A program made the translations under genes and the position numbers. Positions 27,937 to 63,664 of a stretch of DNA of 64,000 bases are shown here, in pieces. Every line of letters begins with the position of its first letter. Positions within the stretch are counted from its first letter, which is position 1. The stretch covers positions 124,001 to 188,000 of IMG/VR virus record IMGVR_UViG_3300024999_000030, one strand, 5' to 3'. The notes under the pieces are model-generated. The model saw only the letters and a program-made list of their open reading frames with translations, did not search any database and was not told where the DNA came from.

Positions 27937-28123
27937 ACTATGGAGGGAAAAATGGATTTTTTTAATTTTAAACCAACAACTATTAAAGAAGTTTGGAATA
28001 ATTGGAAATTTAAAGCAATCGGGCAAGCGATGCTTAATCCTATTCGTCGCCAAATAGACTATGAGGGCCTATCTCGTAGAATTTTCAAGGTGGAGCCCTT
28101 ACCCGCAAAAAAGGATGATCCAG

Positions 28124-28507
28124 ATGGAACTTGATTTCATACGATATCTAATTGTCAATAAACGTGAATTATCAATCCCACAGCGGGACGGCTTGGCTAA
28201 GTTTTTGAAAAATTTAGATATGGCATTGGATTTATATTTAGAAAAACCGGATCAAGACTCTATTAAAGTGGTTCTCACTGCCCTAGCGGGTCCACGACGG
28301 AGTTTTGACGATATGAAGTATCCTAATTGTAATTTGACTATGTTATTTCGTTCATGTCGTGGTTGTCCATGTGTAACTGGACAACATCCCTATGAAGTGT
28401 GTAGTGCAATTATGGGTTGGTCTCAAATGCTACGTGGTGGCGACTGCTCTCCAGAACTTTTTCTTCACTTTATGCAACTCAAAGCCCAATTGGAAATAAT
28501 AAAATAA
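28124..28507 (+). CDS. Divergent Cys4-family paralog
   Basis: C..C..CPC...C...FLHFMQLKAQLE. Confidence 0.55.
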   Translation: MELDFIRYLIVNKRELSIPQRDGLAKFLKNLDMALDLYLEKPDQDSIKVVLTALAGPRRSFDDMKYPNCNLTMLFRSCRGCPCVTGQHPYEVCSAIMGWSQMLRGGDCSPELFLHFMQLKAQLEIIK

Positions 28508-29954: not shown

Positions 29955-31000
29955 ATGAATAAACGTAATATGTCACGTCTTATTAAACAGTTGGAATTAG
30001 TCGCTCTAGATAGTGGAGAAATAGCAAAAAAACTAATTAAATGGGAGAATGGAAATCCAGCATGTGTATTATGGGAGACGTATAGTGATGTTTTTATGGA
30101 ACAATCTCGTTTTTGTCGAAGGTGCCCCGCTAAGTTAGAAGCTGGTAGGTCAAAATGTCAACTGCAACGGTACATTGAAGGTGAAATTAATGAAGGTTCA
30201 TTTTTATTATTAGTTATAGAAATGATTGCATATTTGAAAGTGAGAAGTGATGACAAAATATCTTAAAAAATTAATTGAACTTAAAAACTCTCATAATTTT
30301 AATGTAGAGTCTTTTAATGAGATTTATACTCAAGCCTCTGAAGAAGATAATAAAAAAATACCCTTTGCCATAGCCTTTATCGGATGTGATCAGATATGTA
30401 GTGCTTGCGTGTTTATGTCCCCAGACGAAATGAAACGCACTCCATGTATAATTGGTGAATTAGCTTTTTCTTTAAAAGAAATGAAAAATTGTGATGATAA
30501 TCAATATGAGGCCTTTAGGCTTTTAAAGCTAATACAATTTCAAGCCGCTTTGGAGATATATGAATCCAATCATTCGTTCGGGCGAATCTGAAACAACTCA
30601 GGATAGAATAACTCGACTTAAGGATAAAGCGTTGGCAAAAGAAGCTGTGCTTGTTTCTTATAAAATAATTGAAGCATTTAAAATGGATCCAACTTTAGAA
30701 AATGCCATTCGGATTACATATGCATTATATCCAAATGATAGTTTAGGTCCTGAAAATAGATCAGGAATATTTATTAATGGATGTGCTCTTCTACGTGCTC
30801 ACGGTGGTGAAAATTGGAGTTGTAATAAGTGTTGTTGGCAACATGAAAAACTATGTGATTTGTTATCTTTAATTAATCCAAACATATCCCTCATAGAAAA
30901 AGAAGAAATGCTTGGTAGAGTTCTGATGGCGGCAATTGAAATGCAGGTAACGCTTAGGGTTCATCCAGCTTTTTGTTGGGTGTTTATGGGTATGCCTTGA
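29955..31000 (+). CDS. Three tandem divergent Cys4-family paralogs (29955-30266, 30247-30591, 30560-31000)
   Basis: CxxC..C cores followed by L(I)EMIAYL / LIQFQAALE / AIEMQVTL helices. Confidence 0.6.
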
Positions 31001-45088: not shown

Positions 45089-45481
45089 ATGGCTAACATC
45101 TTGAGCATGAAGGGCTTGGGCGTCAAGGTTACCGTCAAGGTAATCAAGAAGCACAAGTTCGTGGACGGTTCTCCCGAGCTGTCCCACAAGGGCGAGTACA
45201 CTCTCACCCTGTCGGCGGGGTCCAAGTCCGTCTCTACTAAGTGCGTGGGGACGGGCGAGTTGTTCGCCAAGTGCTACGCCATGATGAGCGTGCACTTCCC
45301 CAAGAGCTATGCTAAGTTCCAGGCCATCAGCAAGGTGGAGAAGGCCGCGAACAAGGCGAAGGCGAAGGCGAACCACAAGGCGAAGAAGGCGGCGGCCAGC
45401 GGCGTGGACTTGAAGAGCCTCGCCGCACTCCTCAACCGGGCGAAGAAGGGCAACGGTAAGATGCTGGCCCTGTTCCTCTAA
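45089..45481 (+). CDS. Highly basic Lys/Ala-rich protein, paralog 1
   Basis: RBS aaggag; GC-rich codons; aligns by eye with 56703-57104. Confidence 0.8.
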   Translation: MANILSMKGLGVKVTVKVIKKHKFVDGSPELSHKGEYTLTLSAGSKSVSTKCVGTGELFAKCYAMMSVHFPKSYAKFQAISKVEKAANKAKAKANHKAKKAAASGVDLKSLAALLNRAKKGNGKMLALFL

Positions 45482-45659
45482 GCCAGTATCTCATCATCTT
45501 TCCAGTATCTTATTATAGATACTGACACAATCTAAAGTAACTCATGGGTGGGTTAGTATAATACTAACCCTCTCTGGTCAGTATTCTCCCACCTGCGCGT
45601 GGTACTGACTGCTGATAGATACTGGTCTATCACAACGGGAGAAGATAAGGAGGAGTAAG

Positions 45660-45830
45660 ATGGGACAAGCTAGACAAAGGGGAACCCGGGAACAGCGTGT
45701 CGAACAAGCCCAAGGCCGCAAAGTCGGGGTGCCGGTTAACCTCACGGCACAGCTCCAGCGTAACTTCAGTAACAAAAGGAGTTTCCGTGAGTCGTTGTTC
45801 ACTCGGCTCACTCGTCTCTTTCGCTCTTAA
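45660..45830 (+). CDS. 56-aa basic protein, not in the ORF track
   Basis: RBS aaggaggag; MGQARQRGTREQR... Confidence 0.65.
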   Translation: MGQARQRGTREQRVEQAQGRKVGVPVNLTAQLQRNFSNKRSFRESLFTRLTRLFRS

Positions 45831-46027
45831 GGGGCAGCATCTCAATCATCTGCCTTGACCTCAGTACGTTGAAGTGCTCTGAGGCTAAGTAGGACTAGGA
45901 CTCTCTTATAGTAGAGCCAGCCTACCCCCAAATATAGCCAGTATCCAGAGCTGGTCGATCAGTATCTTAATTACTTAGATATTGGTCGGCCATAATGTGG
46001 GTACTGTATATAGTGGTGTGTGTTTGA

Positions 46028-46199
46028 ACCATACCACATATAGACAGAAAGATGGGTTTTGAGAAAAATGAGATCTAATACCTATAGTTAGTTAGTATCT
46101 CATTGTATAATACTGGCGCTATAATTAAGTATGTCTATATGTAGTGGTGTTAGTAAAGACCATACCACATATAGACAGAAAGATGGGTTTTGAGAAAAA
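46028..46199. repeat. 41-bp direct repeat (46028-46068, 46159-46199) with a partial third copy at ~46223
   Basis: accataccacatatagacagaaagatgggttttgagaaaaa seen twice. Confidence 0.9.
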
Positions 46200-46317
46200 A
46201 CAGTTGTGGTGTGTTATAAAGACACTACCACATATAGTAGTGTAACATAACAGCGCCAGTAATAAAGATACTAGCTAAACCATATGATACTGGATAAACC
46301 AACGGAGGGAAACCACA

Positions 46318-49300
46318 ATGGCTTATCATAAGTCTCAACGCCGCAATCTCAAACCTACAACCATCAGACAGTATCATTATGCTGTAAGCCGGCTTCTCAA
46401 TGCTTGCCCTCCCAATCTTCTCATACAAGTTATGAAAATGATTCGGGCAGGAGCAAAGACTTACCCAGTGTCTAAGATTCAATCTTTCATGGCCGGTAGT
46501 GGATTCTACATGTATTCACGAGAGATTAACAAAGCCATCAACGCTATGCAATGGGGATTATGCCCGCCTCAATATCGCATCTCCAAGAATAATCGCTGGT
46601 ATTTGGATACATTCCCTCAAGAGCCTGGACCGGTTGCTTATGCTGCCATGGAAACGGTCAGTATCAATCATCCAATTACTGCCCCCACACTTCAACCTGC
46701 CATGAACATTGTGTAAATAAAGATACTGGTCTGTAATTCTACCAGTATCTTACCTTCGCCGCCTAGTTACTTTGCATAGTGCAGGGAAACTTCGGCGCGA
46801 TCATAGGCTAATACAAGGAGGACAATATGGATTACGGGTAGCTAAGCTCAAACCTTAATTCAGTGTCTAGAGATGGCGGTCAGTATCGTCCAGTACAAAT
46901 GATTATAAACACTGGGATACTGGCCGTCACACTGTAGATACTGGACAAAACTTTCAATAGGAGGAGGCTACAATGGCCTACACACTATATAATCCACCGA
47001 CTAAGTGGTGGAAAAGGCAACACAGTATCACAATAACTATCTGGCCTAAGTGGTTAGCTCAGAAGCTTTGCAATCACTCTGCACCTAAACCTTCATGGAT
47101 TACTTCAAACACTTGCTACTCTTGCCCGGACTGTTACACTCTTATGATTCCTCCAGGAGCAGTCACCACGAAGGAATAGGGAGCGAGGTGAACGATGAAC
47201 GAGCAACCCAATAGTTCCATCTCAATCGTCCGTTACTCCAGAGATGGCTTCGTGGCTAAACGGCAGTCCAAACATATGTATAATGTTTGGCATGAGCTGT
47301 TTAAGTTTAATAGCCATGACATGCCAGAACATCTTCGTGGTGTCAGCGTAGAAGCACACCATAAGATCGTCCCTTTCTATCGTGAACACCTCGCTGATTT
47401 TAACTGGGGCATCTGGGTATTCATAGAGGGACACGATAACATGATGTCTCTCAATCATCTGCACGGTCAAGATAGGATGGGGCTTAAGCGTTGGACTGCT
47501 GTAATTCCCAGTAACACAGAGGTTTACGGTGTGGGGTGGGATGTCATTGTCTCTATTAGTGATTTCATTCCACAGATGTTCGGCTGCTTCATACCCAAAC
47601 GAAACATTCCTCTCATCACGGATATCAAGTGTGACGATGAATGTGATGTGGAGTTAGAGCTAGAGAGGTATGACTGGGAGCGTGAAGAAGAGAATCGCAT
47701 GCTCCGTTGTGGGTATTAGAAAGGAGGTGTCTTAAGTTGCCAGTCTTCATCGTTCAACAACTCGAAGGCGTCCACTGGTTTGATTCCGGTGATCATGGGG
47801 CCTGTCTGACGCGAATCCTTTCCAGCCAGAGAGAGGGGCTGGAGTTTGCGAGGGATGTTACCAGACGAACACAATTCGAAACCCGAGTAGTGGAGACAGA
47901 CAAAAACCGAATTGTTTACAACGTCTGGTCTCCGCACGCTCCATAACAATCCGTTCTTCACAGAGTACTCCTGTTAAAGGGAGTACTCAATCCCGTCAAT
48001 GTATACTAGCTGGTGGGACGGGGTAAGAGCACAATATATAGTAGTGCTCAGGCTAGTATGCCACAACATATAGGAGAACACATGAACATCAGTCGGCGTA
48101 AGAGGGGTTACATAAATCAGAGAGGAGGATAACAATGAATAGGGCTGATGTCCTCTTGATACTGGACGAAAAGTTTGCCAAGAAGGTGACGGATGAATAC
48201 AAGAAACGCACTGGATACAGTAATGTAATCGGTAGCGTTTCTAGCAATATGAAAGTCTTTATCCCCATCATTAAAGATATTCTTGATGATGGGCTTCGTG
48301 TACAAGAAGAAAACGAAAGAGAGGTGCGACATGATAAAAGTTGAACCGATGGAACCGCTGGACACAGAAAACTACGCCGTGCCCTTGAATCCTTTTCATC
48401 AAGACATATACAGTATGGGGACGACGCTGGGGACAAACGTGACGGTGATGTACGGAAATCATACTCACACTCATCAACCTTACATCATCGTTGTTAACCT
48501 GGATACTGGCGAACGAATCAAGATCGCTTTCTGAAAGGGAGGTGTGTCATGAACGAAAAGGAAAAGAACAGGATGCGACGATTATTGGAAATGGCTTATT
48601 TGTTTGCATGGGGTCCAGATGGTACGGCTGACCGCAGAGATGAATGGTGGGAACTTAAAGCTTTACTTCCCAACGTAGGAACGATGTGTTATGGTGGTAA
48701 TGGTAAATTCCGATGGGACGAATGAGCCAAATAGGTTCAGTTCTTTTTCATAAGGAGGCGTGCCATGGAACCGATCTTTGTTAACAATTGGGGCGAAATA
48801 CGAGGCGGTATCTCAGTGGATGAAGTCTTGAAGGGGGATGGTAAGCTAGCTGGCTTTACTGTCTCTGGCAAGAATCAAGATGGTAAGGAGTTCTGCATTG
48901 ACTTCTTCGTTCATGTTGGTGCCAAAAACATCACCATCACTTGCAGCTAAGGGAGGAGGAACTACATGGAATGGAAAGTCGTTGATACTGGCGATGAAAT
49001 CACCATCGTTCCTGAAACCCGCAATCTCCCCGGCAAAGTTCTTTTCGTCGGAACCTCAGTGGATTGCGATGAATATCTATATGAACTGAGCAACGACGAA
49101 TAACCTAACCCCATAAGGAGGCTCAACATGGAATGCGGATATCTAATTGCGTGGGTCGGTCCTTGTAAAAGCCAACCATCGGACGACAGTTCGTGCCGAT
49201 GTGACAAACACAAGGACAAAGTCTGTGCATCTTGTGGTGCTCCAGCCACTCAGGAATGCGATACGACGGGACAGTTCGTTTGTGGTGCTCCTCTCTGCAA

Positions 49301-50004
49301 CGATTGCGAGCACACCATCGCAGAAGACGGAACCAATGGTGGGGTTGGTTTCGTTCAACTCTCTCCCCTCCCACCGGGCTACAAGCCACACTGCAAGAAA
49401 ACGGAACAGAAATTCACCCCCTGGTTCATGAGGCCACTTTCGGAGAGCTAAGGAGGCTCGACATGCCACTAAAACCTGGCGATCGTTTACCCCGTGCTAA
49501 GGTAGATATCATGGACCTTAGCGAAGTGATGGATGAGGATATGAGGGGTAAGTTGGACACCCTTCGCACCCTCACTCCTCCTAAGCCCAACCTGTTTCAA
49601 CTGGAAGGAGGACCGGCGGATGGATAGAAAAGATCGAATCATCCAGCGCCAGAACAATGAAATACTGCTAATGGAGCTTCGTCTAGAGGAACTGGAAAGG
49701 ACCCTCGGTGAAGCGGTTAATCTCATCCAAGAAATCCACACAGAGATGATGACCGAGCTTCATACCTGTGCTCTGTTCGATGATAAGGTCTGGGTCATCG
49801 ATCAAGAATTGGCAATGGCCCACGCTGCCTTTGAGGAGGATATGGCAAAGGGCCTTGAGACACTTCAAGACGATGAAAGGTCAGATGGCGTACTGGATTC
49901 ATGAAGCAGAGCAGGGAGAGGCATCTGGATATCTTGGTCCCGATAAGAGTGAAGAGTTTCTCAGTAGGATCCTTAACAAGCTGGATGTGCCTCCAGAGGA
50001 TTAA
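46318..50004 (+). other. Cluster of ~14 short hypothetical ORFs with strong SD sites, including Cys-rich Zn-finger 49128-49451
   Basis: aggagg-type RBS before nearly every start. Confidence 0.6.
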
Positions 50005-50054
50005 ACCAGTATCTCTATAGTCTTAAAGATACTGGCGAAGTAATAGATACTGAG

Positions 50055-50920
50055 CATGGATGACACGTGACTCAGTTCTATAGGTAAGCCTAGCATATAG
50101 CATGTAGCGTCTCCTATAAGAGGCACGTGACTATATGTTGTCGGATGGTGGCTAGGCATGTCGGGTAGCAGGCGGGTGGCTAATCCGATACTTCAGTTTC
50201 AATCATCGCACGTCACCTACTAAATAAGTGGTACGGCGGTAGTTGATTAGAGCCCATTTTAATCGCGTGACGATGATTCAGGGTAGGTCCAGTGACTCCT
50301 GCAATACACTTACCTCTGACGGGCTGATAACCCCTCATGCGAGTAATGTGACGGGAGACCATAGCACATGAATGCCCTTATCCCTATAGGGGACGGAACG
50401 TATGTGACTATGAGAATCGTCCAGAGTAAGAGCCTGGATGATAGGAGAGACGCGTAAGCGACTCTAAAGACTGGACGAATTAGACGGCAGGTGGGTGGCC
50501 AGTCTAATGGGTTTGCAAAACTATTCTACTGCATGGAGGGACGGCAAAAGCCCTTCCCAGTTTCCGTTAAGCGGTGCTGACCGTGACGGTGGAATAGTTT
50601 AAAGGGTAGGCTTAGAAATATACCACATGGAGAAGACACCCCAATCGAGTGGAGTCAGTCATATAGATGGCCTGTGATGGTATAGGGGCTTATGGAGAGT
50701 AAGCCAGGCTAAGCGGTTAGGGTGAGCAGGTGAGTGGCTTCCTAACACTTAAGTTAAACTGGTGTCTATCATATAGGTAGCGTCCGGTAGAGTCCGGTGT
50801 GTATGATGGGCCAGGAAAGGTAAGCGAGGAGATGGCATCGTAGATGTGGGAGTTTTCTTCCTATGGTGCAGATTAGGCGGTCCTCGCGTGGCGTCAGCAG
50901 GTGGGTGGCAGGCGCTCTCG
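50055..50920 (+). ncRNA. Candidate large structured non-coding RNA (~870 nt)
   Basis: No ORF >=60 aa in the track; many nested stems with G-U pairs; four GC-AGGYGRGTG-GC stem-loops. Confidence 0.72.
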
Positions 50921-50943
50921 GAATAATATGAAAGGAGGCGGCT

Positions 50944-51294
50944 ATGACTTCAAGAGAAAATCTTCAAAGAATTAATGAAGCAATCAAAGCCGCTAAACAT
51001 TTAATTAAACACCCCCATAGTAAATCGGCATGGGGGAGTTTAGATTATAACACTCTGCCAATAGGCAATTATTCATCAAAAGGATTTACTTGTCCAATAA
51101 GTTGTGATAATTGTCCACTGGCATTGGGAATAACTCCGTTGAATCTTCCTGAGTTTATTTGTGAGGGTAATGCCCATGACATTATAATGGAAAAACAAAT
51201 CATGGGAGAGGTTATATTACTTCTCATTCAATTTGTGGCCACTATGGAAGTAGTCCAGGAGGATATTAAAAGGGGCCAAGGAGGTACAACATGA
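50944..51294 (+). CDS. Cys4-family paralog
   Basis: CPISCDNCPL...FIC...GEVILLLIQFVA. Confidence 0.8.
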   Translation: MTSRENLQRINEAIKAAKHLIKHPHSKSAWGSLDYNTLPIGNYSSKGFTCPISCDNCPLALGITPLNLPEFICEGNAHDIIMEKQIMGEVILLLIQFVATMEVVQEDIKRGQGGTT

Positions 51295-51593
51295 GAAAAT
51301 TAAATAATAAAGAAAGACGAGCACAGATAGAAGCAGTAAAACAATTATTAGATGACGTTAAAGATATTTATCTTTGGAGATAATTACATTCTGTTACTGG
51401 ATTCTTTAATTCAATAGATTTCTGTCCGGACCTTCCTGGTCAAATTTTAAGGTGTCTGCATTGTCCCTTAAGATTGAACTCAGCAACTCATTTATGTCGA
51501 TATAGACATCAGAATTATAAGGAAGTCATAATATCGGATGGTGAAATAACCATTAGGCTTCTGGAGTTTCTAGCCTATATACAAATAACCTAA
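51291..51593 (+). pseudogene. Cys4-family paralog with in-frame TAA at 51381-51383
   Basis: ...IYLWR*LHSVTG...CPDLPGQILRCLHCPLR...HLCRY...DGEITIRLLEFLAYIQ. Confidence 0.8.
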
Positions 51594-51609
51594 CGAAAGG
51601 AGGCTTCAG

Positions 51610-52023
51610 GTGAGAAAATGTAATGGATGTAAGCAGACCAAAGATGAATATTACATGCTTAAACCTGAAGTCTGGATACAGGCATGTATGAAGCCCGTTA
51701 AAAACATCCCAGTAATATCTGTCCTACGCATGCTTTGTGTATCATGTGTAGAAAAGAGACTGGGAAGGGAACTTAACTGGCGGGACTTTGCTCTTTGCCG
51801 ACTTAACTTGGACCCATCTGAACCGAGAACGGCTATACTTCAAGATCGAATGAGTGGTATAACCAATCGCCTTCCACAGTGGTTCTTCAATAGATACGGT
51901 GAAGATCAATGGGATGTGTCGGCCTTAGCTTATGGATGGCCACTGAGAGGAGGATGCAATGAAAAACACACCGATAGAAAAAGCAAAGCGGGCGGCGGAG
52001 TATCTAATCAAGCATCCTCATAG
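51610..52023 (+). CDS. Hypothetical phage protein
   Basis: C..C, YML...VW, LCVSCVEKRLGREL...DF. Confidence 0.6.
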   Translation: MRKCNGCKQTKDEYYMLKPEVWIQACMKPVKNIPVISVLRMLCVSCVEKRLGRELNWRDFALCRLNLDPSEPRTAILQDRMSGITNRLPQWFFNRYGEDQWDVSALAYGWPLRGGCNEKHTDRKSKAGGGVSNQASS

Positions 52024-53528
52024 TAGAATCGCTTGGGCTATGTTAAGCGATAATACTTCTCCTTCGTGGGGCAATAAACTAATTCGGTGTCCATTTGATT
52101 GTTATAACTGCCCATTAAGAACTGGCGCAAATGAATTAGGTCTTCAGACATATATATGTGGTAAGTCTGATTTTGAATCCAAGAGTGGTAATTTATTCGG
52201 AGAGGTTATATTGTACCTCATCCAATTTGTTGCTTTTGTGGAAGCGTTTCAAGGGGCAAAGCCATGATAATCACATTTAAAAGTGTCATCAACATGCCTG
52301 ATTAGATTCATTGCCTTTGCTCAGGTGGAAGTGGAGGATTCCCATGAAAGTCCCAGATAAAGAGGATAGGCAATTACAACTCACGACGATTTACGACCTG
52401 ATAAATAACTTGGATGATCCCAAGTATTGGAGAAGACTTTGGAACGTTACTGGGGGGCACTATGAGGAGCCAAAAGCAGAATGGAAAGATTTTTGTCCAT
52501 CTATTGATGGTTCGCTCCGGTGCTATAATTGCCCCCTTCGAGTGTTGGGTGAACATTATCAAGTCAACTATCTCTGTCGCCATAGTGGTTCTAACAAACC
52601 TGATCCAGCTAATGGAGAAGTCCTTCGTAGGTTATTGGAGTTTCTAGCCTACTCACAATTATAAGGAGGGTCCAAATGAAATGAGAGGATATGAAATAAG
52701 GACCCAGGAACAAATGGAACATCAAATAAAAGTAGCCCAAGCATTACTTAACGACTTAAGTAATGTGAATCTATGGAAGGAACTGTCTCGTATAACTGGA
52801 CTACAACCAGTCGTAGTAAGTAAAACTAGATTAACTAAGACTGATTACTGTCCAGGTTTATCCGTCTCAACTCCCTCACGGTGTAAAATCTGTCCTCTTT
52901 GTCTCCCTAGAGCCCAAGTACCTGGACAAACTTCAAAATGGGATTACTATCTCTGCCGAAGGTATATGTCTCATGAAAAATTGTGTCCAGAGATAGAAGA
53001 TGGGGAAGCGACTCGTAGGCTATTGGAATTCATAGCCTTCATACAAATACAACCCGACTCATAGGAGGTGACGATGAAAATCTCTCGCGTTCCATCACAG
53101 TTCGCCCCTGGTCGCTACAACGATGAATTCGTTTATAGGGAGGTGATCATGAAGCATGGTGTTACATGACCAACTCAAATAGTACAACCCCCATCAAAAT
53201 CATCAAAGAAATCCCTGAAGAACAAATCAAAGCAGCCCAGTATCTAATCAATCACATTGATGATCCTGAAGGCTGGAAACGCTTGCAGGAAGTAACTGGT
53301 GATACTGGGATCTTTGAATCCACAATCGATCACTGTGGCGACAATGCATACTCTGGAAGGCTGCCACAGATCACATGTTCAGCGTGTCCCCTCAGGGTAG
53401 AAAGTAGCACATATCTCTGCCGATATAGTCACCCAAATTATCCTCATGTCAATATGGAGGACAGTGCGATAATTCTGAAACTGATAGAGTTTATCGCATA
53501 TGTTCAAACAGTTTTTCCTAAGGCATGA
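51959..53528 (+). CDS. Four tandem Cys4-family paralogs (51959-52267, 52344-52664, 52681-53064, 53166-53528)
   Basis: C..CxxCPL..Y(L/I)C..GE...L(L/I)(E/Q)F(I/L/V)A in each. Confidence 0.8.
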
Positions 53529-53846
53529 GATATACTTGGAAGGAATGCAGAGAGTTAATTAGCTGCTGCACTTAAAGTAGTAGCTAAGCCACGATCCAAG
53601 AAAGCCTGGAAGGAACTGGGTAAAGTTACTGGTGTGAATTATCGCACACCCGACAATAGTCTAGTCGGGAAAGAAGTCGATTTTTGTAAGAAGGCTTGTT
53701 CCAAATGTCCCTTGTATGTAAAGAGAGCGGTATACATTTGCCGCAAGGACATTTGGCCAGAAATGTTGATAGACGTTAGTGAGGGCGAAATCCTTCGTCA
53801 CTTGCTAGAGTTTATCGCTCACATCCAAATACAGGAGGAGCAGGAC
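53525..53846 (+). pseudogene. Cys4-family paralog with a +1 frameshift near 53560 and no stop before ORF 53847
   Basis: ATGA overlap start MRYTWKECRELI; other frame continues AAALKVVAKPRSKKAWKELGKVTG...CSKCPL..YIC..EGEILRHLLEFIA. Confidence 0.65.
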
Positions 53847-53984
53847 ATGGCAAACGCATCTCAACTCCGTCGGGCCAAAGCGAACAAACTCACCGCCACC
53901 CAGGAACGCAAGCAGTCTCTCAAGGCTAATCGTGTCTTCGGACAGACGAGGACGACGATGCCAAGGAAGTCCAAGAGCCGTTAG
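53847..53984 (+). CDS. 45-aa basic peptide with its own RBS
   Basis: ggaggag then ATG; MANASQLRRAKANK. Confidence 0.55.
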   Translation: MANASQLRRAKANKLTATQERKQSLKANRVFGQTRTTMPRKSKSR

Positions 53985-54108
53985 TCTCCGTTAGTATTCA
54001 GAGCCAGTGGGCCAGTATCTTATAATGTAACAATCTCAACAATGAGATACTGGCTCATTGTAATGTGGATACTAACTCTGGGGCGAAAGTTTAAATGGGA
54101 GGTGGACA

Positions 54109-54768
54109 ATGGAAAAACTGATATTGCCCCTGATGAAGCCCGACCCGAAACAAATAGCAAAGGAAATGAACATAATGAACATGAAGACGGTCGGAAGCAA
54201 TTATCTTGAGAATCTCTTTCGGCCCCCAGGATATGCAAAGCTTATCATCACTGCCACCATTCAATTCATGAATACTCAATTTCCCAAGGATACTGGGCTG
54301 ATTGTTACTGGACTTAGCGGAAGTTTACTGGGATATGCCATCATGCTCTTGGGTGGTATTCCAGTAGCCTTTGTCCGTAAGGATGATGAACATTCTCATG
54401 GTGAAAGGATTGAAGGTATCCTCGCAAAGAAAGTCGTGTTCTTTGACGACTTCATTGCTAGGGGGACGACCTTTTTAAATATTCAAACGGCCATCCAGAA
54501 ACACAATCACATATTATCCAGCAAGGTTAAATTTGCTGGCTCTTTCTTCTGGTCATATTTCGATGTTATGTGTAAGGAAGAAGTTGCCAAGAACGGTCCC
54601 GTGTTTCGACTTCAGGTTGCCCGTTCTCCTGGGTCAAGTTATATCCAACGCTGGAACGATCATGACTCTAGGTGGAAGCTTCTTGAAAAATACAAGCTAG
54701 GATCCTATGACGATCCTTCTTGGAAACAACCTCCCAAGGAAATCAACTTATCTGGCGATGCTGTGTAA
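54109..54768 (+). CDS. Type I phosphoribosyltransferase (orotate PRTase-like)
   Basis: VAFVRK..HSHG..IEG and PRPP-binding VVFFDDFIARGTT. Confidence 0.75.
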   Translation: MEKLILPLMKPDPKQIAKEMNIMNMKTVGSNYLENLFRPPGYAKLIITATIQFMNTQFPKDTGLIVTGLSGSLLGYAIMLLGGIPVAFVRKDDEHSHGERIEGILAKKVVFFDDFIARGTTFLNIQTAIQKHNHILSSKVKFAGSFFWSYFDVMCKEEVAKNGPVFRLQVARSPGSSYIQRWNDHDSRWKLLEKYKLGSYDDPSWKQPPKEINLSGDAV

Positions 54769-55048
54769 TTAAACTACAACCAAGGAGGTGGGAATGAACA
54801 TAAGAAAACTGGAAGTCATCCGGCAGGTATATCGTCGGGCATTCCTGGATCAGTCTCATACCTTTAAATTGAAAGACCGGCTCCAACGCATCTCTCAATT
54901 GAACGGCAAGAATGCTGAAGGAACAACAGTCTTCTTCGTTCGGGCATTTAAGACTGGGTGTGGTGGGGGTGTTTACTACGAGATTATCAAGGAAACGGAG
55001 AACAAAGACATCCCCCATATAAACTGTCTTTCCTGAAGGGATAAGACG

Positions 55049-55258
55049 ATGGTACTGGCAGACTTCAAACCTGGCGACCGGGTTAAGGTCGTGTCGGAAG
55101 AGAACTGGGGCAACCGCAAGAACCTCGTGAATAAGACGGGGGTGGTTGTTAAGACCATGAACGTCCATAAGGATGGCGTGGTGATGGTTAACATGGACGA
55201 CAGAAGGTGGAGACAGCAGACCTTCTATCCGTCCCAACTCAGTATCGTCCAGGACTAG
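55049..55258 (+). CDS. Single KOW/SH3-like beta-barrel protein
   Basis: FKPGDRVKV....TGVVV....VMVNMD. Confidence 0.55.
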   Translation: MVLADFKPGDRVKVVSEENWGNRKNLVNKTGVVVKTMNVHKDGVVMVNMDDRRWRQQTFYPSQLSIVQD

Positions 55259-55748
55259 GAAGAGTTAACAGGTCGTGGTCAAACTCCCAGTGATGGTTTG
55301 GGCATAAGATGTGAGTGTTTTTCGGCCCATTAATTTCCCCTAGAGTCATAGGCACTGGACACTTTGATATGGCTATGATGTGAGCGACTTCAACATGCTT
55401 ACTGTAGCCACACACCTGACATCCCTTGCTTAATCTCTCTCGATTCCAGCGCCTGGCTAATCCCCTAATGCCCGAATACCTATTAGCGGGTAAACCTTTG
55501 CTTGTCTTGTGGCCATTGAGGTGTTCTTCAAGAGTAGATGACTTCAATTTTGCGGCAAGTTTATCTATCTCTTTCCTACATGGCAGGCAAAATGTTCTCC
55601 TGCTGGTACATGGTCCTCCACATTTAGCACATTTATGCTCTGGCTTGCGTTTAGGGTGGCGTAGATTGTTGTAGGTTGCGGCACAAGATTTAGAACAGAA
55701 CTTGTCATTGTCATGGGACTTTAAACACTGGGGACATTGCTTCTGCAT
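55239..55748 (-). CDS. HNH endonuclease with N-terminal Zn fingers
   Basis: FCSKSC; CQVCG...EVAHI...N...LCPNHHWEFD; RBS aaggag. Confidence 0.85.
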   Translation of the reverse strand: MQKQCPQCLKSHDNDKFCSKSCAATYNNLRHPKRKPEHKCAKCGGPCTSRRTFCLPCRKEIDKLAAKLKSSTLEEHLNGHKTSKGLPANRYSGIRGLARRWNRERLSKGCQVCGYSKHVEVAHIIAISKCPVPMTLGEINGPKNTHILCPNHHWEFDHDLLTLPSPGRY

Positions 55749-55809
55749 GTTAATCTCCTTTGAACACACTATATACTGTTTTATTAATATAGCGTGTTCA
55801 AATCTTTTT

Positions 55810-55885
55810 GGGTCGTTAGCTTAGCATTGAAAGCCATCGGCTCATAACCGATAGATCACAGGTGAGAATCCTGTACGACCCACCA
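55810..55885 (+). tRNA. tRNA with CAT anticodon (elongator Met or Ile2), atypical elbow
   Basis: Acceptor gggtcgt/acgaccc + ACCA; anticodon arm atcgg-ctcataa-ccgat; T arm acagg-tgagaat-cctgt. Confidence 0.85.
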
Positions 55886-55886
55886 T

Positions 55887-55961
55887 GGGCCCGTAACTCA
55901 ATGGTAGAGTATCGCCCTTTTAAGGCGAGAGTTGAGGGTTCGAGTCCCTCCGGGCCCACCA
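55887..55961 (+). tRNA. tRNA-Lys(TTT)
   Basis: Acceptor gggcccg/cgggccc + ACCA; tcgcc-cttttaa-ggcga; TTCGAGT. Confidence 0.95.
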
Positions 55962-55999
55962 CTTATCTTATACAGGCGAACGCCAGGAAGGAGGTAACC

Positions 56000-56380
56000 G
56001 TGCCGTGCGATTGCGGTAATTGCCATTTCGGATTCAACTGTTCCAAAGAGTGGCAGACTCTCCACCCCGGAACGACCTGGTACGCCTGCGAGTTCTGCGG
56101 ACTCTATCAGGCTTCAGCTCCCATGTGTAACAAGTGCGAGCTGCAGGAGGAAGAGACCAAGTCCGGTATGAAGAGGTACGAGTTCCAGCGGCGCTCCCCA
56201 TTCTCTGGTAAGATTCACACCATGACCATCCAGATGACGGAGCAGCAGTTCGCGGAACTCTCCCAGCCCAACGGTCGTCACATCCAGGACATCCTCCCCC
56301 ATTGCACCCCCGATGAGAGGGAGTTCATCATGACCGGTATCACTCCCGAGGAATGGGAGCAGACCTTCGGGAAGAAGTAG
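56000..56380 (+). CDS. Cys-rich N-terminus plus conserved phage domain (IQ...P...EREF..TG.T..EW)
   Basis: RBS ggaggt before GTG 56000. Confidence 0.65.
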   Translation: MPCDCGNCHFGFNCSKEWQTLHPGTTWYACEFCGLYQASAPMCNKCELQEEETKSGMKRYEFQRRSPFSGKIHTMTIQMTEQQFAELSQPNGRHIQDILPHCTPDEREFIMTGITPEEWEQTFGKK

Positions 56381-56387
56381 TTACTTT

Positions 56388-56473
56388 GCGGCTGTGGTGG
56401 AATGGCATACACTACAGACTTAAAATCTGTCGGTCGTAAGACCTTGCGGGTTCGAATCCCGCCAGCCGCACCA
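56388..56473 (+). tRNA. tRNA-Leu(TAA), long variable arm
   Basis: Acceptor gcggctg/cagccgc + ACCA; acaga-cttaaaa-tctgt; TTCGAAT. Confidence 0.95.
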
Positions 56474-56702
56474 GCCCTTCCCAGTATCTCTTTCGTCCGA
56501 ACCGATAGGATACTGTCTCTGGCATTTCCCAAGGTGGAGATGCTGTATAATCGTAAGACCCACGGTAATGTATAGAGAGGATAAGCCTACTCTATCTATT
56601 GTGGGGACGGAGTAGTACCGCATTCCAGTATTAAAATGAGTCCAGGATACTGGTCTTGCGGAAACTTAAACTGGACCAAAGATCATAGGGGTTTTACAAC
56701 AA

Positions 56703-57104
56703 ATGAATATTCTCAACCAGAAAGGCCTCGGCGTGAAGTTCGTGGTTAAATGCACCAGGAAGGCAGTCTTCATCGAGGGTTCGCCCGAGAAGTCTTCCAA
56801 GGGGCATTACAACCTCACCGTCAGCGCCGGCGCCAAGAAGTTCTCCACGACCTGCATTGGTTCGGGAGAGCTGTTCGCTAAGGCATGGGCGATGTTGGCT
56901 GCCCACTTCCCCGCCGCCTATAAGAAGGCGACGGCCATCTCCAAGCAGCAGCGCGATGAAAACCGCGCCAAGGCAAAGACCACCCGGAAGGCGAAGAAGT
57001 CCGCTGCCTCCGGCGCCGATGTCAAGACGCTGCTTCAGGCTCTTGCTCGTCAGGGTAAGGGCAAGGGTAAGGGCAACGGTAAGCTTGTTGCCCTCTTCCT
57101 GTAG
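56703..57104 (+). CDS. Highly basic Lys/Ala-rich protein, paralog 2
   Basis: Shares NIL..KGLGVK, GSPE.S.KG, GELFAK, ASG.D.K.L, GNGK..ALFL with 45089-45481. Confidence 0.8.
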   Translation: MNILNQKGLGVKFVVKCTRKAVFIEGSPEKSSKGHYNLTVSAGAKKFSTTCIGSGELFAKAWAMLAAHFPAAYKKATAISKQQRDENRAKAKTTRKAKKSAASGADVKTLLQALARQGKGKGKGNGKLVALFL

Positions 57105-57124
57105 TCGGAACTTTTAATCCGGCT

Positions 57125-57345
57125 ACCCACAATCTGAATTAACCCCCGGAGGGTCCCTGACGGGACCCTTCAATCCTGCCGGTGTCCCGTCGCTCGTGGG
57201 GCAGGGTAAGCAGACTTTATAGTTTGCAGGCGATGGGAAAGAAGTTCGGTTAGTGTCATTAGACACTAAGAAAGGTAGGTGCCGATGAAGCAGAGTTTTA
57301 AGGCTTAGTCTATTGGTAGACTATAGCCGGCACCACAGGCGATAC
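57125..57345 (+). ncRNA. Candidate structured RNA or leader
   Basis: Hairpins agggtccc/gggaccct, ttagtgtc/gacactaa, ggtgccg/cggcacc enclosing tagtcta/tagacta. Confidence 0.4.
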
Positions 57346-57384
57346 TCAACGACTTAGAGTTTTATCTCCACACAGGAGGTTACG

Positions 57385-57648
57385 ATGAGCGAAACCAAAG
57401 GTACTCTCGGTAGCGTTTTGGCAAAAGCCCTTCACAACACCCCCATCGAAGCCCGGCTCAAGGAAGAGAAGTTCAATGCTTCCCAGCGGGAATGGCTCAA
57501 GGACATCCTCATGCGCGACTTGAGGTTGGTGGAACCCAAGGTTCTGGGAGACGCCATTCATGAGGCTTCCGTCCGAATCAACAAGGGTGAAAACGAGTGG
57601 CGACTGCTCCGCGACAAAGCTGTTCGAGCACTCTCTCTTCGCAAGTAA
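57385..57648 (+). CDS. Hypothetical protein
   Basis: RBS caggagg; GC-rich codons. Confidence 0.7.
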   Translation: MSETKGTLGSVLAKALHNTPIEARLKEEKFNASQREWLKDILMRDLRLVEPKVLGDAIHEASVRINKGENEWRLLRDKAVRALSLRK

Positions 57649-57849
57649 GTTAACCTTCACTTAGTCTACTCCGGATAGGTCGGCCAGGTACATTCGCCGG
57701 GATTATCTTGGAGGTGGGGTAGGCATTGGCATAGAACTATGTGGGTGAGAACGGTCGTAAGGCCCGGAGTGACCACATATCATTAGTTATGTCATGTAAG
57801 CCCTATCCCTTTAAGGCTTTACCAGTATCAACCTTCGTAGGAGACAGAC

Positions 57850-58614
57850 ATGAGAAGGCGCAATCCTAAGGTATTAGTACTGGATGGGGAGGTTGTCGGG
57901 AGGCCCAGCGAAGTAGACTGCATGAACCACAATAGAATCGAGTGTATCAACGAGGAAAGGTTCAATGCTGACACTGACAAGATGAAGCTTCACGTTCTCA
58001 TCTATGACTTCCTTCTCAGGTGTCTCCCCATCTCTTCCAATTTCTCTCCGGTGGCCAGGCTTCTCTCTCTTTGTGGACCGGAACTCGAAGGACACCACAC
58101 CCTGTGGATGGAAGCCATTGAGAGACATAAGATGAGGTGTGTCACGCCCGCATTCATTGAGAGAAGCAGCGAGGTCATCAAAAAGAACCACCTCATCGAT
58201 AAGGCGGTTAAGTGTAAAGCCACTTTGATCGAGGGAAGCGTCGAAGACTACATCGGTTACGGGTTTAACTGCCTCGATCTGGATTACTGTGGGAACTTCA
58301 AGTCTATGGCCAAGTTCCTCTTTTCTTCTCTGAACAGGAACTTGATGCCTCCCTCTCTTACTATTCATGTTACTAGTGGATATAGGGGGAAAGATAAGGA
58401 CGGGGGAAATGGTGTGACCGCTGAGGAACGGGACGACATTATGCACCGTCTCGATAAGCTCATGTACCGCAAGTTTTACACGAAAGGCTCGGCGTGGGAA
58501 GAGCCGACGAAGGAGACGTTGGACGAGGAAAGTGGTAAGAAGGGACAGGCGATGAGATGCTTCTGTCGTTCTTATCACAGAAACTACGCTCGGATTGCTC
58601 GGGAACTTTCTTAA
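57850..58614 (+). CDS. Putative class I SAM-dependent methyltransferase-fold protein
   Basis: LLSLCGP motif I-like, acidic IE, FNCLDLDYCG motif IV-like. Confidence 0.4.
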   Translation: MRRRNPKVLVLDGEVVGRPSEVDCMNHNRIECINEERFNADTDKMKLHVLIYDFLLRCLPISSNFSPVARLLSLCGPELEGHHTLWMEAIERHKMRCVTPAFIERSSEVIKKNHLIDKAVKCKATLIEGSVEDYIGYGFNCLDLDYCGNFKSMAKFLFSSLNRNLMPPSLTIHVTSGYRGKDKDGGNGVTAEERDDIMHRLDKLMYRKFYTKGSAWEEPTKETLDEESGKKGQAMRCFCRSYHRNYARIARELS

Positions 58615-58739
58615 TCACCTATGGCCGGTATGTCCCATGGGTTGTGTCACTTATCTATTGGCAGCGAGATAGTCTATGAGCCGGTATCTTCAACGGTGGA
58701 AACACTCACGAAGACACTGGACATGATGGGGGCAGAATC

Positions 58740-61225
58740 ATGAAATTAAACCACTTCGGTCCTGTAGTTTCCAGAAAGGTCTGGGAAGCGAAGGCCGCTG
58801 GTAAGACGGAAGTCTCTCTCACGATGGAGGAACTGGAAGCCATTAGCGAGAAGATTTCCTCCTTGGACCGTACTGCCGCAACCTACTTCGACCTGCTGAG
58901 CGACGAGGACAAGAAGAAGGTATGCGGCGAGATGTTCAAGGACCCTAACTGATGGACCTTCATCCCTTTCGGACAATCTCGGCCCTGAAGAAAGAGTTAT
59001 CTGCCGAGCGTAAACTAAGGGAGGAGCGTGAGGTTCTTTACCAGGACGCTCTGAGGAATAACTACTGGCTACACAAGCAGAATGAAGCCATGGGATTGGC
59101 TCATGCTGCTAAGGTCCAGTCTCTTACGGCTGAGATTGTCTGGCTCAGTAATCAGAGTCGGGCCTATTACAAACTCTCTGAAGCATACGGCCAGAGAGTA
59201 CTTATGTTACTGGCTAAGAAGATTAACCAGTAACTCCATCATGCGGACGATCATGGAAGATACTTGGCGCATGTATTCAGGATTGCCGGTGAAGAATAGG
59301 TTTTATCCTGCGTATTCATATCACAACAAGGATAAGAGCACTCTTCACCGCCGTAAGAAGAACCGACTGGCCCAGGCTTCTCGCAAGGCCAATAGGAGAA
59401 AGTGATGGCCGAGTGCAGATATCGCCCGACTGAAAGGGCGGGGCTTTACTTCATGGTCTTCATCATCCTTCTCTACATTCTTGACTTGAGTTGGACGACA
59501 GAGAAGATGGAGAAAGACCTGGCAGCCGTAAAGGCAGCCGTCGTGAAGGCTGAAGCACCCGAAGTTAAGAAGTAACGGATGCAGTATGATTAGCATCCAA
59601 CTTCTCGGGCAGGGAGACACCATTCTCCCAACAGATTGGTGTCGGCCTTTGGACTATTTATACACTGAGTTTGGGGAACTGCACCTTACCAATGCCTACA
59701 GCGGCAAACCCATCAATCATCTTCGGTGGCTCAGGGTAAGTGATGTGCTGGGGGACTGTTGGTTTGGTAAAACGGTTGGGCAGTATCATTCCTTTCCGGG
59801 TGCTGGCTTCTTAGAATTCGTAAGAGGCCACATCCCTCCATCCCACCAGTTTGATACTTGCAGGGGGACATGATGATACTGAATGAAGACGGCCTGAAGA
59901 AACATTGGAAGGCCATTCCGAAACGGCGCAAGAAGATACTCCTGAAGTTGATGGAGGAGTACATCGACTCGAAGAACAAGTGGGCGAAGAAGGCCAGGAA
60001 AGGCCGATAGGAGACGATGGTGAAGTTCCTTCAGACCCTCGCGCTTTTTCTGAAGTATAAGGCTGAGGAACTGTGGAAACCGGTTCTCGGCTTTACGATT
60101 CTAATCCTGTTCTGCTGGGGAGACAAGTGGCTCTTCTGTGACTACCTGAACTTGACGGGAGTCGATGCGGTTGTTATTCCACTTGGCTTGCTGTTCTGGG
60201 TTTTGTGTGCCATCTGGGCCAAGACGGCATGTGTGTATCTTTACCATCGTCTGCGGTCGGATGTGTACAATTACGGTAGTGCGGACGAGTGGATGTTAAT
60301 TACTGGCATCTATGCCGGCTTTATCACCAGTGCTGTTACTTTCCCCTGGGCCGCTGAGATGGCGGATAAGGATACTGCCTTTGCCGGTCCATTTCTCGCT
60401 GGCATTCTAGCCAGTCTGCTTGTTGGTGGTGGCCTTCTACTCCTTAACATCTTCCTGGGTATCGCCGATGGTACTTGGAAGTTTATCCGCTCCAACTGGG
60501 ACCGAGCAAAGTGGGCCGTGGAACATAAGGAATATGTCAAGGAGATGGAAGAGGACGAGAAGTAACAACCACAAAGGAGAACCCCATGACTACCAAGGCG
60601 ACGCTCTGTCTCATCTGTGGTCTCCCCATCAAACAGTCGGGCAAGGATAACATCCATCCCAAGTGTCAGCCGAAGCCCGCCAAGTTGAAGAACTAGTAAC
60701 ATGAAGCGCCTGTTCAGTTATCTACAGTATCTATTCCGTAGGGAGACACTGGCACGGGAAATCCAAAGGCTTAATTCTCCCTTCATGAAGTATCGTGAAG
60801 CGGTAGACGAAGCCGAGTTTTGGATGTCGTTCTCTAAGGGGTAACTCATGGATCCAAACACCGGACAAGTTATCGTTGTATTGGCGGGGTTTGCTTTAAT
60901 TGGTTTTTGCGCATGGTTGGCATACAAAAGACAAAAACTAATTAAGTAGCCGGAGGAAAACATGAGCGGATTTAAATATGTTGTTTTCCAAATGGCAACT
61001 GAAATCGAAGAGATTACTCTCTTTGCAACCACGCTATCACACAGGGAGATGTCGCAAGCCTTCTGTTCCTATTTTCGTGGGGCAAAGCCAATCCGCGCTG
61101 GGTTCTGCGGTGTTGGTGTCGATGGTACAATGGGAGCTTATGGAGACAGTGAGTCACTAAAATTGAAGTCAGACCCCGTAGTGGACTCTAGGATGTTAAA
61201 CAACATTAACTATAGGGGTTTCTGA
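58740..61225 (+). other. Run of short hypothetical ORFs, including multi-TM protein 60017-60565
   Basis: ORF track; coupled starts. Confidence 0.55.
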
Positions 61226-62556: not shown

Positions 62557-62563
62557 AAGACCA

Positions 62564-63660: not shown

Positions 63661-63664
63661 AGCC

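What the first reader, a model, noticed from the sequence alone, without database searches (positions are those of the whole stretch)
50944..53846. Tandem array of seven Cys4 paralogs immediately downstream of the large RNA
Seen: 100-127 aa proteins with an N-helix IKAA..L(I)..P....(A)W..L..VTG, a core C-x(2-9)-CxxCPL-x(5-12)-Y(L/I)C and a C-helix GE...L(L/I)(E/Q)F(I/L/V)A; the loops between are highly variable. The first RBS lies ~15 nt after the RNA's last stem and no terminator is visible, suggesting co-transcription. Inference: a diversified Zn-binding family. RNA plus array may form one ribonucleoprotein or anti-defence system. I do not recognise the family.
Basis: partly seen in the sequence, partly recalled or inferred. 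Interest (0 to 1): 0.78.

Follow-up and report, generated by a model that had tools for sequence, protein, structure and literature searches.

The report
Phage-only Cys4 helical protein gene array
A giant groundwater phage carries a tightly packed row of five intact and two broken copies of a small four-cysteine protein that has no known relatives. The same family reaches about 50 copies in another phage that lacks the neighbouring RNA, so it looks like an expandable set of accessory proteins, not a partner of that RNA.

Summary
The array is real, but it is not seven intact genes. Five copies are intact: P1, P3, P4, P5 and P6. P2 has an in-frame TAA. P7 has lost its start through a frameshift and has also lost its stop. 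Two unrelated small ORFs sit inside the array.

The family has four invariant cysteines and no match in Pfam, PHROGs, NCBIfam, PADLOC, PDB sequences or 50,697 GenBank phage records. AlphaFold2 models (pLDDT 79-81) show a small helical bundle with a Cys4 knuckle. No fold search found a specific relative.

Across about 15 billion proteins the family appears in three phage lineages plus three short contigs. One lineage carries about 50 copies, including a 38-gene tandem run, and no homologue of the RNA is adjacent to them. Two further members lie elsewhere in this window.

The upstream 0.9-kb region is a real structured RNA (z -5.8; 35 compensatory pairs against one relative). It carries four hairpins with an AGGNGRGUG loop. 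The RNA, the array and a very basic 45-aa gene lie between two copies of a conserved stem-loop that resembles the promoter-terminator cassettes of T4-like phages. Co-transcription is therefore plausible.

An obligate RNA-protein complex is not supported. My best reading is a birth-and-death family of metal-stabilised binder proteins for host takeover or counter-defence. Function is inferred, not shown.

The parts
50006..50053 (+). Upstream boundary element. It is a stem-loop (stem CCAGTATCT / AGATACTGG) followed by a third half-site, AGATACTGA, and starts right after the stop codon of an overlapping upstream ORF (49768-50004; the conserved 94-aa gene ends at 49904).
   Evidence: Fold z -4.7. 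The same stem sequence sits at the same place in L001 (z -5.8). The motif occurs 8 times in the window against 0.02 expected, all at 45-64 kb.
50054..50930 (+). ORF-free structured RNA, or a long leader. It holds four hairpins with a 9-nt AGGNGRGUG loop, at 50159-50190, 50479-50508, 50716-50746 and 50890-50916.
   Evidence: MFE z -5.78. No Rfam match even at E<=10. 104 consensus pairs, 35 of them compensatory against L001. The loop motif occurs 4 times against 0.05 expected, only here. All hairpins fold alike. It is not a decayed paralog.
50944..51294 (+). P1, 116 aa, intact. Subclade A1, with C-x3-C-x2-C-P-L spacing.
   Evidence: (50% identity to L001 10001-10318).
51291..51593 (+). P2, a pseudogene. 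It has an in-frame TAA at 51381-51383, and its start overlaps the P1 stop (ATGA).
   Evidence: The same base is present in contigs from other runs.
51610..52023 (+). Unrelated 137-aa CxxC...CxxC ORF inserted in the array. It overlaps the P3 start by 65 nt.
   Evidence: phrog_6053, E 1.4e-8. It does not match the family HMM.
51959..52267 (+). P3, 102 aa, intact. Subclade A1.
   Evidence: AF2 model: pLDDT 80.6, pTM 0.75.
52344..52664 (+). P4, 106 aa counted from the ATG, intact. Subclade A2.
52681..53064 (+). P5, 127 aa, intact. Subclade A2.
   Evidence: (43% identity to L001 11529-11879).
53074..53169 (+). Unrelated 31-aa ORF with its own SD. Its stop overlaps the P6 start (ATGA), and P6 has no SD of its own.
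53166..53528 (+). P6, 120 aa, intact. Subclade A2.
   Evidence: Ortholog of L001 11907-12266 (47-50% identity; tree support 100/96). AF2 model: pLDDT 78.5, pTM 0.72.
53545..53846 (+). P7 remnant. The SD-preceded ATG at 53545 is out of frame. The family frame opens after a stop at 53556-53558 and has no stop at its C-terminal end.
   Evidence: Gene callers start it at GTG 53634 (P0006).
53847..53984 (+). 45-aa very basic protein (pI 12, charge +11.5) with its own AGGAGG SD. In L001 it is a separate gene.
   Evidence: (50% identity).
54012..54053 (+). Downstream boundary element: the same CCAGTATCT...AGATACTGG stem-loop.
28061..28507 (+). Distant family member outside the array, 148 aa.
   Evidence: Iterated family HMM, E 7e-12.
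29955..30266 (+). Distant family member outside the array, 103 aa.
   Evidence: Family HMM E 5.5e-4 on first pass and 1e-8 after iteration. It falls in clade A of the tree, on a long branch.

Best explanation
Shown: the locus is an operon-like cassette in the accessory, higher-GC part of a 333-kb groundwater jumbo phage. It holds five intact and two decaying copies of a phage-restricted family of about 100-130 aa. Each protein is predicted to be a small cytoplasmic helical bundle: two N-terminal helices and one long C-terminal helix. The middle segment is pinned by four invariant cysteines. The flanking loops (C1-C2 and C3-C4) vary in length and sequence. The copies arose by old tandem duplications. 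The A1 and A2 subclades predate the split of three phage lineages. The family evolves by birth and death: two pseudogenes here, and about 50 copies in another lineage.

Inferred: the Cys4 site binds a structural metal, Zn most likely and Fe-S possible. Each paralog binds a different protein target in the infected cell, so the family acts as a host-takeover or counter-defence toolkit. Its size is tuned by duplication and loss, helped by recombination at the repeated stem-loop cassettes. The upstream structured RNA is a separate conserved element, probably transcribed in the same unit or serving as its long leader. It is not a required partner of the family.
For: - Family and invariant residues.
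- No known family: Pfam, PHROGs, NCBIfam and PADLOC; PDB sequences (only spurious Cys-pattern hits); GenBank phages.
- Rarity: 16 hits among 1.84e9 representatives; add nothing outside the same phages.
- Expansion elsewhere: a run of about 38 genes plus a run of about 8 plus single copies in one phage.
- Real genes under selection: dN/dS 0.21-0.75 among recent paralogs. Orthologs between this phage and L001 keep 43-50% identity, the same as flanking genes.
- Fold. Only generic helical-bundle matches, Z<=6.2.
- Operon features.
- Bracketing elements. Similar composite promoter-terminator stem-loops (PeSLs) drive gene shuffling in the variable regions of T4-like phages (PMC4122927, PMC2839356).
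- Tandem amplification of counter-defence loci in a phage has a precedent (PMC13096335).
- Family without the RNA.
Against: - No target, metal, expression or phenotype is known, and the host is unknown.
- dN/dS gives no gene-wide sign of positive selection. Orthologs are not evolving faster than their neighbours. Both weaken an arms-race reading.
- The P1-type gene directly follows the RNA in both phages that have the RNA. The RNA's predicted closing helix touches the P1 SD region, with compensatory changes. Some functional link for P1 therefore remains possible.
- The Cys-loop part of the P6 model has low confidence (pLDDT 55-59).
Confidence: 0.42

Rival explanations
1. The Cys4 proteins are transcription regulators of the phage's own programme. 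They might be DNA-binding factors that read the AGATACTGG half-sites of the repeated stem-loop cassettes. Alternatively they might bind the host sigma factor or RNA polymerase, as WhiB-like or zinc anti-sigma proteins do.
For: The proteins are small and helical with a 4-Cys metal site. Eight of 17 clade-A members have C-x3-C-x2-C spacing, reminiscent of the H-x3-C-x2-C of zinc anti-sigma factors. The CAGTATC...GATACTG element and the family occur together in all three phage lineages, including just upstream of the 38-gene array at L008 2388-2420.
Against: No Pfam hit to WhiB, zf-HC2 or any DNA-binding family. The spacing is not conserved across the family. Net charge runs from -5 to +4. Up to about 50 divergent paralogs against one conserved DNA motif is hard to reconcile with a single regulator role. 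The co-occurrence is equally explained by shared ancestry of the three phages.
Confidence: 0.2
2. The structured RNA and the Cys4 proteins form one ribonucleoprotein: the paralogs dock on the four AGGNGRGUG hairpin loops, and the complex acts in counter-defence or translation control.
For: The order RNA then P1-type gene is conserved in the only relative that has the RNA. The unit is bracketed by two cassette elements. The hairpin loops are conserved while their stems vary, as expected for a recognition site. The RNA's closing helix reaches the P1 SD region.
Against: The family, both subclades A1 and A2, occurs without the RNA beside it in another lineage (only part of that phage's contig was held) and elsewhere in this window. 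In L001 a cassette element separates the RNA and P1 from the other three paralogs. The paralogs are near-neutral or acidic, whereas the adjacent 45-aa protein (pI 12) is a better RNA-binding candidate. Synteny in one related phage is not independent evidence.
Confidence: 0.12
3. The four cysteines hold an Fe-S cluster, and the proteins act as redox or Fe-S sensing modules instead of structural-zinc binders.
For: C-x3-C-x2-C-P in 8 of 17 clade-A members, and CP-x2-CP in clade B, resemble Fe-S ligand motifs. One member gives a weak hit to FhuF_C 2Fe-2S (E 0.0028).
Against: The C1-C2 spacing varies from 3 to 15 residues. No Fe-S family matches. Only one weak hit among 59 members.
Confidence: 0.1

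Closest known systems
WhiB-like (Wbl) proteins of actinobacteria and their phages
   Same: Small (80-120 aa), mostly helical cytoplasmic proteins whose fold is organised by four cysteines around a metal centre. They are often encoded by phages and act by binding a host protein.
   Different: No Pfam match. The C3-C4 spacing is 10-21 residues, not 5. There is no G[VI]WGG turn and no basic tail. The metal is unknown.
Zinc anti-sigma (ZAS, H-x3-C-x2-C) domains
   Same: A helical bundle with a metal site that includes an x3 / x2 spaced triad. Eight of 17 clade-A members have C-x3-C-x2-C.
   Different: Cys stands in place of His. The spacing is not conserved across the family. The fourth ligand lies downstream, not upstream. 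There is no zf-HC2 hit and no structural match above noise.
PeSL promoter-terminator cassettes and the small ORFs they flank in variable regions of T4-like phages (PMC2839356, PMC4122927)
   Same: A conserved stem-loop is repeated at intergenic positions of a variable, small-ORF-rich region and brackets gene cassettes. This offers a route for duplication, loss and exchange.
   Different: The sequence is different (CCAGTATCT / AGATACTGG). Promoter activity is untested. The phages are a 333-kb jumbo phage and its relatives, not shown to be T4-type.
Multigene families and gene 'accordions' of large DNA viruses, and SegB-driven amplification of counter-defence loci in phage T6 (PMC13096335)
   Same: Tandem paralog arrays in accessory regions whose copy number differs greatly between related viruses, with pseudogenes among them.
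   Different: No link to any host defence is shown here. The duplications in this window are old (23-46% identity), not recent amplifications.
Large ornate phage-associated RNAs (GOLLD, ROOL)
   Same: The neighbouring RNA is about 0.9 kb, highly structured, phage-borne, and lies a few kb from a tRNA cluster.
   Different: No Rfam match at any threshold. It sits directly in front of a coding operon and may be a leader.

Membership tests
WhiB-like (PF02467) | Profile match to the Wbl family | tested here: not met
   No Pfam hit for any of 59 members at E<=1. Only one weak PHROG hit to a WhiB-like regulator (E 0.085-0.14).
WhiB-like (PF02467) | Cys spacing C-x(14-22)-C-x2-C-x5-C and a G[VI]WGG turn (from my own knowledge of the family) | tested here: not met
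   C3-C4 is 10-21 residues and C1-C2 is 3-15. No GVWGG-like motif in the alignments.
WhiB-like (PF02467) | Binds a [4Fe-4S] cluster | not testable with these tools
   Needs purified protein.
Zinc anti-sigma factors (zf-HC2) | H-x3-C-x2-C motif and a profile match | tested here: not met
   No Pfam hit. The -4 position is Cys in 8 of 17 members and is absent at that spacing in the rest.
Any solved or predicted fold family | Structural match clearly above background | tested here: not met
   Foldseek against PDB, AFDB clusters, Swiss-Prot and BFVD: nothing below E 0.9. VIA-align best Z 6.2 and 6.1, on generic helical bundles and below the tool's stated noise level for helical models. The atlas search gave only generic bundles.
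DUF5685 (lead from ESM Atlas features) | Profile match | tested here: not met
   Feature score only 0.83-0.86. No Pfam DUF5685 hit for any of 59 members.
PeSL-like promoter-terminator cassette (for the bracketing elements) | Conserved stem-loop repeated at intergenic sites of a variable region | tested here: met
   8 matches (7 distinct sites) against 0.02 expected, all at 45-64 kb and after stop codons or tRNA-Leu. The element is also present in L001 and L008.
PeSL-like promoter-terminator cassette (for the bracketing elements) | An early promoter adjoining the stem-loop, and terminator activity | tested here: inconclusive
   A third half-site follows 8-20 nt after most stem-loops, and two sites have a TGTATAAT / TGTACAAT box. 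The sigma-70 scan shows no enrichment. No U-tract. No transcript data.
Rfam RNA families, including GOLLD and ROOL (for the neighbouring RNA) | Covariance-model match | tested here: not met
   Nothing at gathering score. Only chance-level hits at E<=10.
Type III toxin-antitoxin (repeat RNA plus protein) | Tandem direct-repeat RNA upstream of an endoribonuclease toxin | tested here: not met
   No tandem repeat in 49900-54100 apart from a 23-nt chance repeat. The proteins match no toxin family.

The most novel reading that the evidence does not exclude
The four conserved AGGNGRGUG hairpin loops of the upstream RNA are docking sites for Cys4 paralogs, at least the P1 type. RNA and proteins would then assemble into a multivalent phage ribonucleoprotein. 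The RNA-free arrays in other phages would be a secondary, protein-only use of the same scaffold.
Probability: 0.1. Interest if true: 0.8.

Novelty: new variant of a known kind. Interest (0 to 1): 0.55.

Why it matters
Expanded paralog arrays are the hallmark of host-interaction genes in large DNA viruses, but they are rarely documented in phages. This family has no sequence or fold relatives and is confined to a few uncultured phages. Its copy number ranges from a handful to about 50 per genome, with pseudogenes and a fused two-domain copy. It is therefore a clear case of birth-and-death evolution in a phage accessory region. If the paralogs prove to be binders of host defence or takeover targets, the conserved scaffold with variable loops would be a natural library of small metal-stabilised inhibitors. 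The neighbouring uncatalogued 0.9-kb structured RNA, and the shared stem-loop cassettes that bracket the unit, each deserve a study of their own.

Tried and rejected
- L003, found by the RNA pattern in IMG/VR, is a chance match inside a dCMP deaminase gene.
- The metagenome scan with the RNA pattern returned only this phage's own contigs.
- The profile search against PDB sequences gave only flavivirus E-protein hits on a Cys-rich stretch. I judged these spurious.
- The DUF5685 lead from ESM Atlas features has no profile support.
- A six-frame translation of the RNA region does not match the family HMM, so the RNA is not a decayed gene copy.
- Four more ORFs that look like the family by eye (30247-30591, 30560-31000, 32617-32829, 43904-44374 on the minus strand) reach only 21% hhalign probability. 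They are not counted as members.
- No RNA run holds the locus. The DNA contigs laid on it show no variants.
- dN/dS scans found no gene-wide positive selection.
- A single structure line for all seven hairpins was not possible because the bulge register differs, so pair counting on A10 was dropped.
- Stop-codon recoding was rejected as an explanation for the TAA in P2, because TAA, TAG and TGA all end neighbouring genes.
Full report
**What is in the sequence**

The window is part of IMGVR_UViG_3300024999_000030, a 332,730-bp phage contig from groundwater metagenomes. The phage encodes GroEL, topoisomerase II and AAA ATPases. GC content rises from 0.31-0.39 before about 44 kb to 0.43-0.53 after it.

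Between 50944 and 53846, on the + strand, lie seven units of one protein family. Five are intact:
- P1, 50944-51294
- P3, 51959-52267
- P4, 52344-52664
- P5, 52681-53064
- P6, 53166-53528

Two are broken:
- P2 (51291-51593) has an in-frame TAA at 51381-51383, in the conserved W-x-x-L motif. The base is identical in contigs from independent runs. TAA, TAG and TGA all end neighbouring genes, so this is a nonsense mutation and not recoding.
- P7 has a stop at 53556-53558 in its own frame. The only ATG preceded by a Shine-Dalgarno (SD) sequence, at 53545, is in another frame. P7 also lacks a stop at the family's C-terminal end and runs into the next gene.

Two unrelated ORFs are inserted in the array. 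One is 51610-52023 (phrog_6053). The other is a 31-aa ORF at 53074-53169 whose stop overlaps the start of P6.

All genes have strong AGGAGG-type ribosome-binding sites, short gaps or ATGA overlaps, and no terminator-like site between them. There is no repeat at the DNA level, so the duplications are old.

**Is it a family?**

Yes. Pairwise BLASTP E-values among the copies run from 7e-25 to 4e-6. In a 10-sequence alignment with a relative, the invariant positions are W, L, T, four Cys (C...C-x2-C-P-L...C), and the L, F and A of the C-terminal helix. The loops C1-C2 (3-15 residues) and C3-C4 (10-21 residues) vary in length and sequence.

**Relatives**

The family matches nothing in:
- Pfam, PHROGs, NCBIfam or PADLOC
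- PDB sequences
- 50,697 GenBank phage records

A full HMMER pass over 1.84 billion representative proteins found 16 hits. Word-indexed searches added nothing outside the same phages.

Genomic contexts show three phage lineages plus three short contigs:
1. This phage.
2. L001, a 173-kb contig with the same synteny.
3. A phage represented by a 72.8-kb and a 27-kb contig (loci L005, L008, L011 and others). It carries a run of about 38 consecutive genes of 92-141 aa (L008 2608-14449), a second run of about 8, and several single copies.

An iterated HMM over the fetched loci collects 61 members. These include two more in this window (28061-28507 and 29955-30266) and a fused two-domain gene in L008.

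The tree separates two clades:
- Clade A ('CxxCPL', 18 rows, support 100/99) holds all window array copies, four L001 copies and five copies of the third phage.
- Clade B (41 rows) is almost entirely the third phage's own expansions.

Within clade A, subclade A1 (P1, P3) and subclade A2 (P4-P7) each include a member from the third phage. These duplications therefore predate the split of the three lineages.

Orthologs between this phage and L001 are 43-50% identical, the same as flanking genes. Recent paralogs in the third phage have dN/dS of 0.21-0.75. These are real genes under purifying or relaxed selection, with no gene-wide sign of positive selection.

**Fold**

AlphaFold2 with the 56-59-sequence family alignments gives consistent models:
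- P6: pLDDT 78.5, pTM 0.72
- P3: pLDDT 80.6, pTM 0.75

Each model has two N-terminal helices, a middle segment with a short helix at CxxC and a small beta-hairpin carrying the cysteines, and a long C-terminal helix.

Foldseek against PDB, AFDB clusters, AFDB Swiss-Prot and BFVD finds nothing below E 0.9. VIA-align over 48,161 chains peaks at Z 6.2 and 6.1, on generic helical bundles. That is below the tool's own stated noise level for helical models. The ESM Atlas shape search gives only generic bundles. I could not read model coordinates, so the geometry of the four Cys is not verified.

Net charge ranges from -5 to +4 and pI from 5.2 to 8.9. The proteins have no signal peptide or hydrophobic segment.

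**The RNA and its link to the array**

The region 50054-50930 has no ORF and folds far better than shuffles (z -5.78). It is conserved in blocks with L001. RNAalifold finds 104 consensus pairs, 35 of them with compensatory changes. No Rfam family matches, and the region is not a decayed gene copy.

The RNA carries four hairpins of identical architecture with a 9-nt AGGNGRGUG loop. L001 has three.

The predicted closing helix pairs 50258-50266 with 50920-50935, next to the SD of P1, and shows compensatory changes in L001. That rests on two sequences only.

The RNA motif and an nhmmer profile of the RNA find nothing in the loci of the third phage. There, even the closest relatives of P1 (L011 8001) and of P4-P7 (L005 8001) have ordinary genes immediately upstream. 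Only about 40 kb of that phage's 72.8-kb contig was held, so an RNA elsewhere in it cannot be excluded.

**A new observation bearing on co-transcription**

A stem-loop with the stem CCAGTATCT / AGATACTGG occurs eight times in the window (0.02 expected). All copies lie at 45-64 kb and at intergenic positions, after stop codons or after tRNA-Leu. Each is usually followed 8-20 nt later by a third half-site.

One copy sits at 50006-50053, just before the RNA. The next is at 54012-54053, just after the 45-aa basic gene. There is none in between. The same element occurs in L001 and in the third phage, including directly upstream of the 38-gene array (L008 2388-2420).

This resembles the composite promoter-terminator stem-loops (PeSLs) that flank small ORFs and mediate shuffling in the variable regions of T4-like phages (PMC2839356, PMC4122927). 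It makes a single transcription unit of RNA, array and basic gene plausible in this phage. In L001, however, one such element (11067-11107) separates the RNA and P1 from the three A2 paralogs. No RNA run holds the locus, so none of this could be checked against transcripts.

**Interpretation**

- Shown: a new, phage-restricted Cys4 helical family; its tandem organisation; two pseudogenes; its large expansion elsewhere; its occurrence with no RNA homologue adjacent; a real structured RNA upstream; and the bracketing elements.
- Inferred: metal binding (Zn or Fe-S undecided), protein-target binding, a host-takeover or counter-defence role, and co-transcription.

I put 0.42 on the binder-toolkit reading, 0.2 on phage transcription regulators, 0.12 on an RNP with the RNA, and 0.1 on Fe-S or redox proteins. 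The remainder is unassigned.

Tandem amplification of counter-defence loci in phages has a recent precedent (PMC13096335). The lack of accelerated evolution between orthologs is a real weakness of the arms-race reading.

**Verdict**

The 'diversified metal-binding family' reading stands. The 'RNA plus array is one system' reading meets half of its own refutation criterion (the family occurs without the RNA) but retains a small probability for the P1-type gene.

The family is a new variant of a known kind of viral feature, the expanded accessory paralog family. It has no detectable relative in sequence or fold.

Noticed in passing
window 45003-63914 (8 sites); L001 6478, 6987, 9245, 11067, 13752, 14690; L008 269, 2388: A conserved stem-loop (CCAGTATCT ... 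AGATACTGG, often with a third half-site 8-20 nt downstream) is repeated at intergenic sites of the higher-GC accessory region in three phage lineages. It looks like a PeSL-type promoter-terminator cassette. The half-site has 60 matches with up to one mismatch, against 12.7 expected.
   Followed up: partly
window 50054-50930: An uncatalogued structured RNA of about 0.9 kb (z -5.8; 35 compensatory pairs against L001; no Rfam hit). It has four hairpins displaying an AGGNGRGUG loop that resembles a Shine-Dalgarno sequence. Repeated CGUGAC motifs pair with each other in the consensus fold.
   Followed up: partly
window 53847-53984; L001 12512-12682: A conserved 45-56-aa extremely basic protein (pI 12) closes the unit. 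In the window it is in frame with the stop-less P7 remnant, so a fusion product is possible. It is a better nucleic-acid-binding candidate than the Cys4 proteins.
   Followed up: partly
window 54109-54768; L001 12761-13291: A phosphoribosyltransferase-like gene (phrog_2068, E 1e-9; weak PRTase hits in Pfam, NCBIfam and PADLOC) is conserved just downstream of the unit.
   Followed up: partly
window 55239-56473: An HNH endonuclease gene on the minus strand (PF13391, E 1.4e-9) lies beside a tRNA-Met / tRNA-Lys / tRNA-Leu cluster. The stem-loop element follows tRNA-Leu here and in L001.
   Followed up: no
L008 2608-14449; L005 4127-6917: Another phage holds a run of about 38 tandem family genes plus a second run of about 8. 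These include near-identical neighbours and one fused two-domain gene (L008 10292-10933).
   Followed up: yes
window 30247-30591, 30560-31000, 32617-32829, 43904-44374 (-): Four more small ORFs show a C...CxxC...C pattern and a C-terminal amphipathic helix like the family's. Profile comparison gives only 21% probability, so kinship is unproven.
   Followed up: partly
window ~44000: GC content jumps sharply from 0.31-0.36 to 0.43-0.53 and stays high to the end of the window. The jump coincides with the region that carries the stem-loop cassettes.
   Followed up: no
window 49128-49451: A 107-aa Cys-rich ORF (13 Cys) lies upstream of the unit. It matches no family in Pfam, NCBIfam or PADLOC.
   Followed up: no
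window 6422-8083 and 10399-13443: The phage encodes its own GroEL-like chaperonin (phrog_5725, E 9e-135) and a topoisomerase II large subunit (phrog_543, E 2.5e-156).
   Followed up: no
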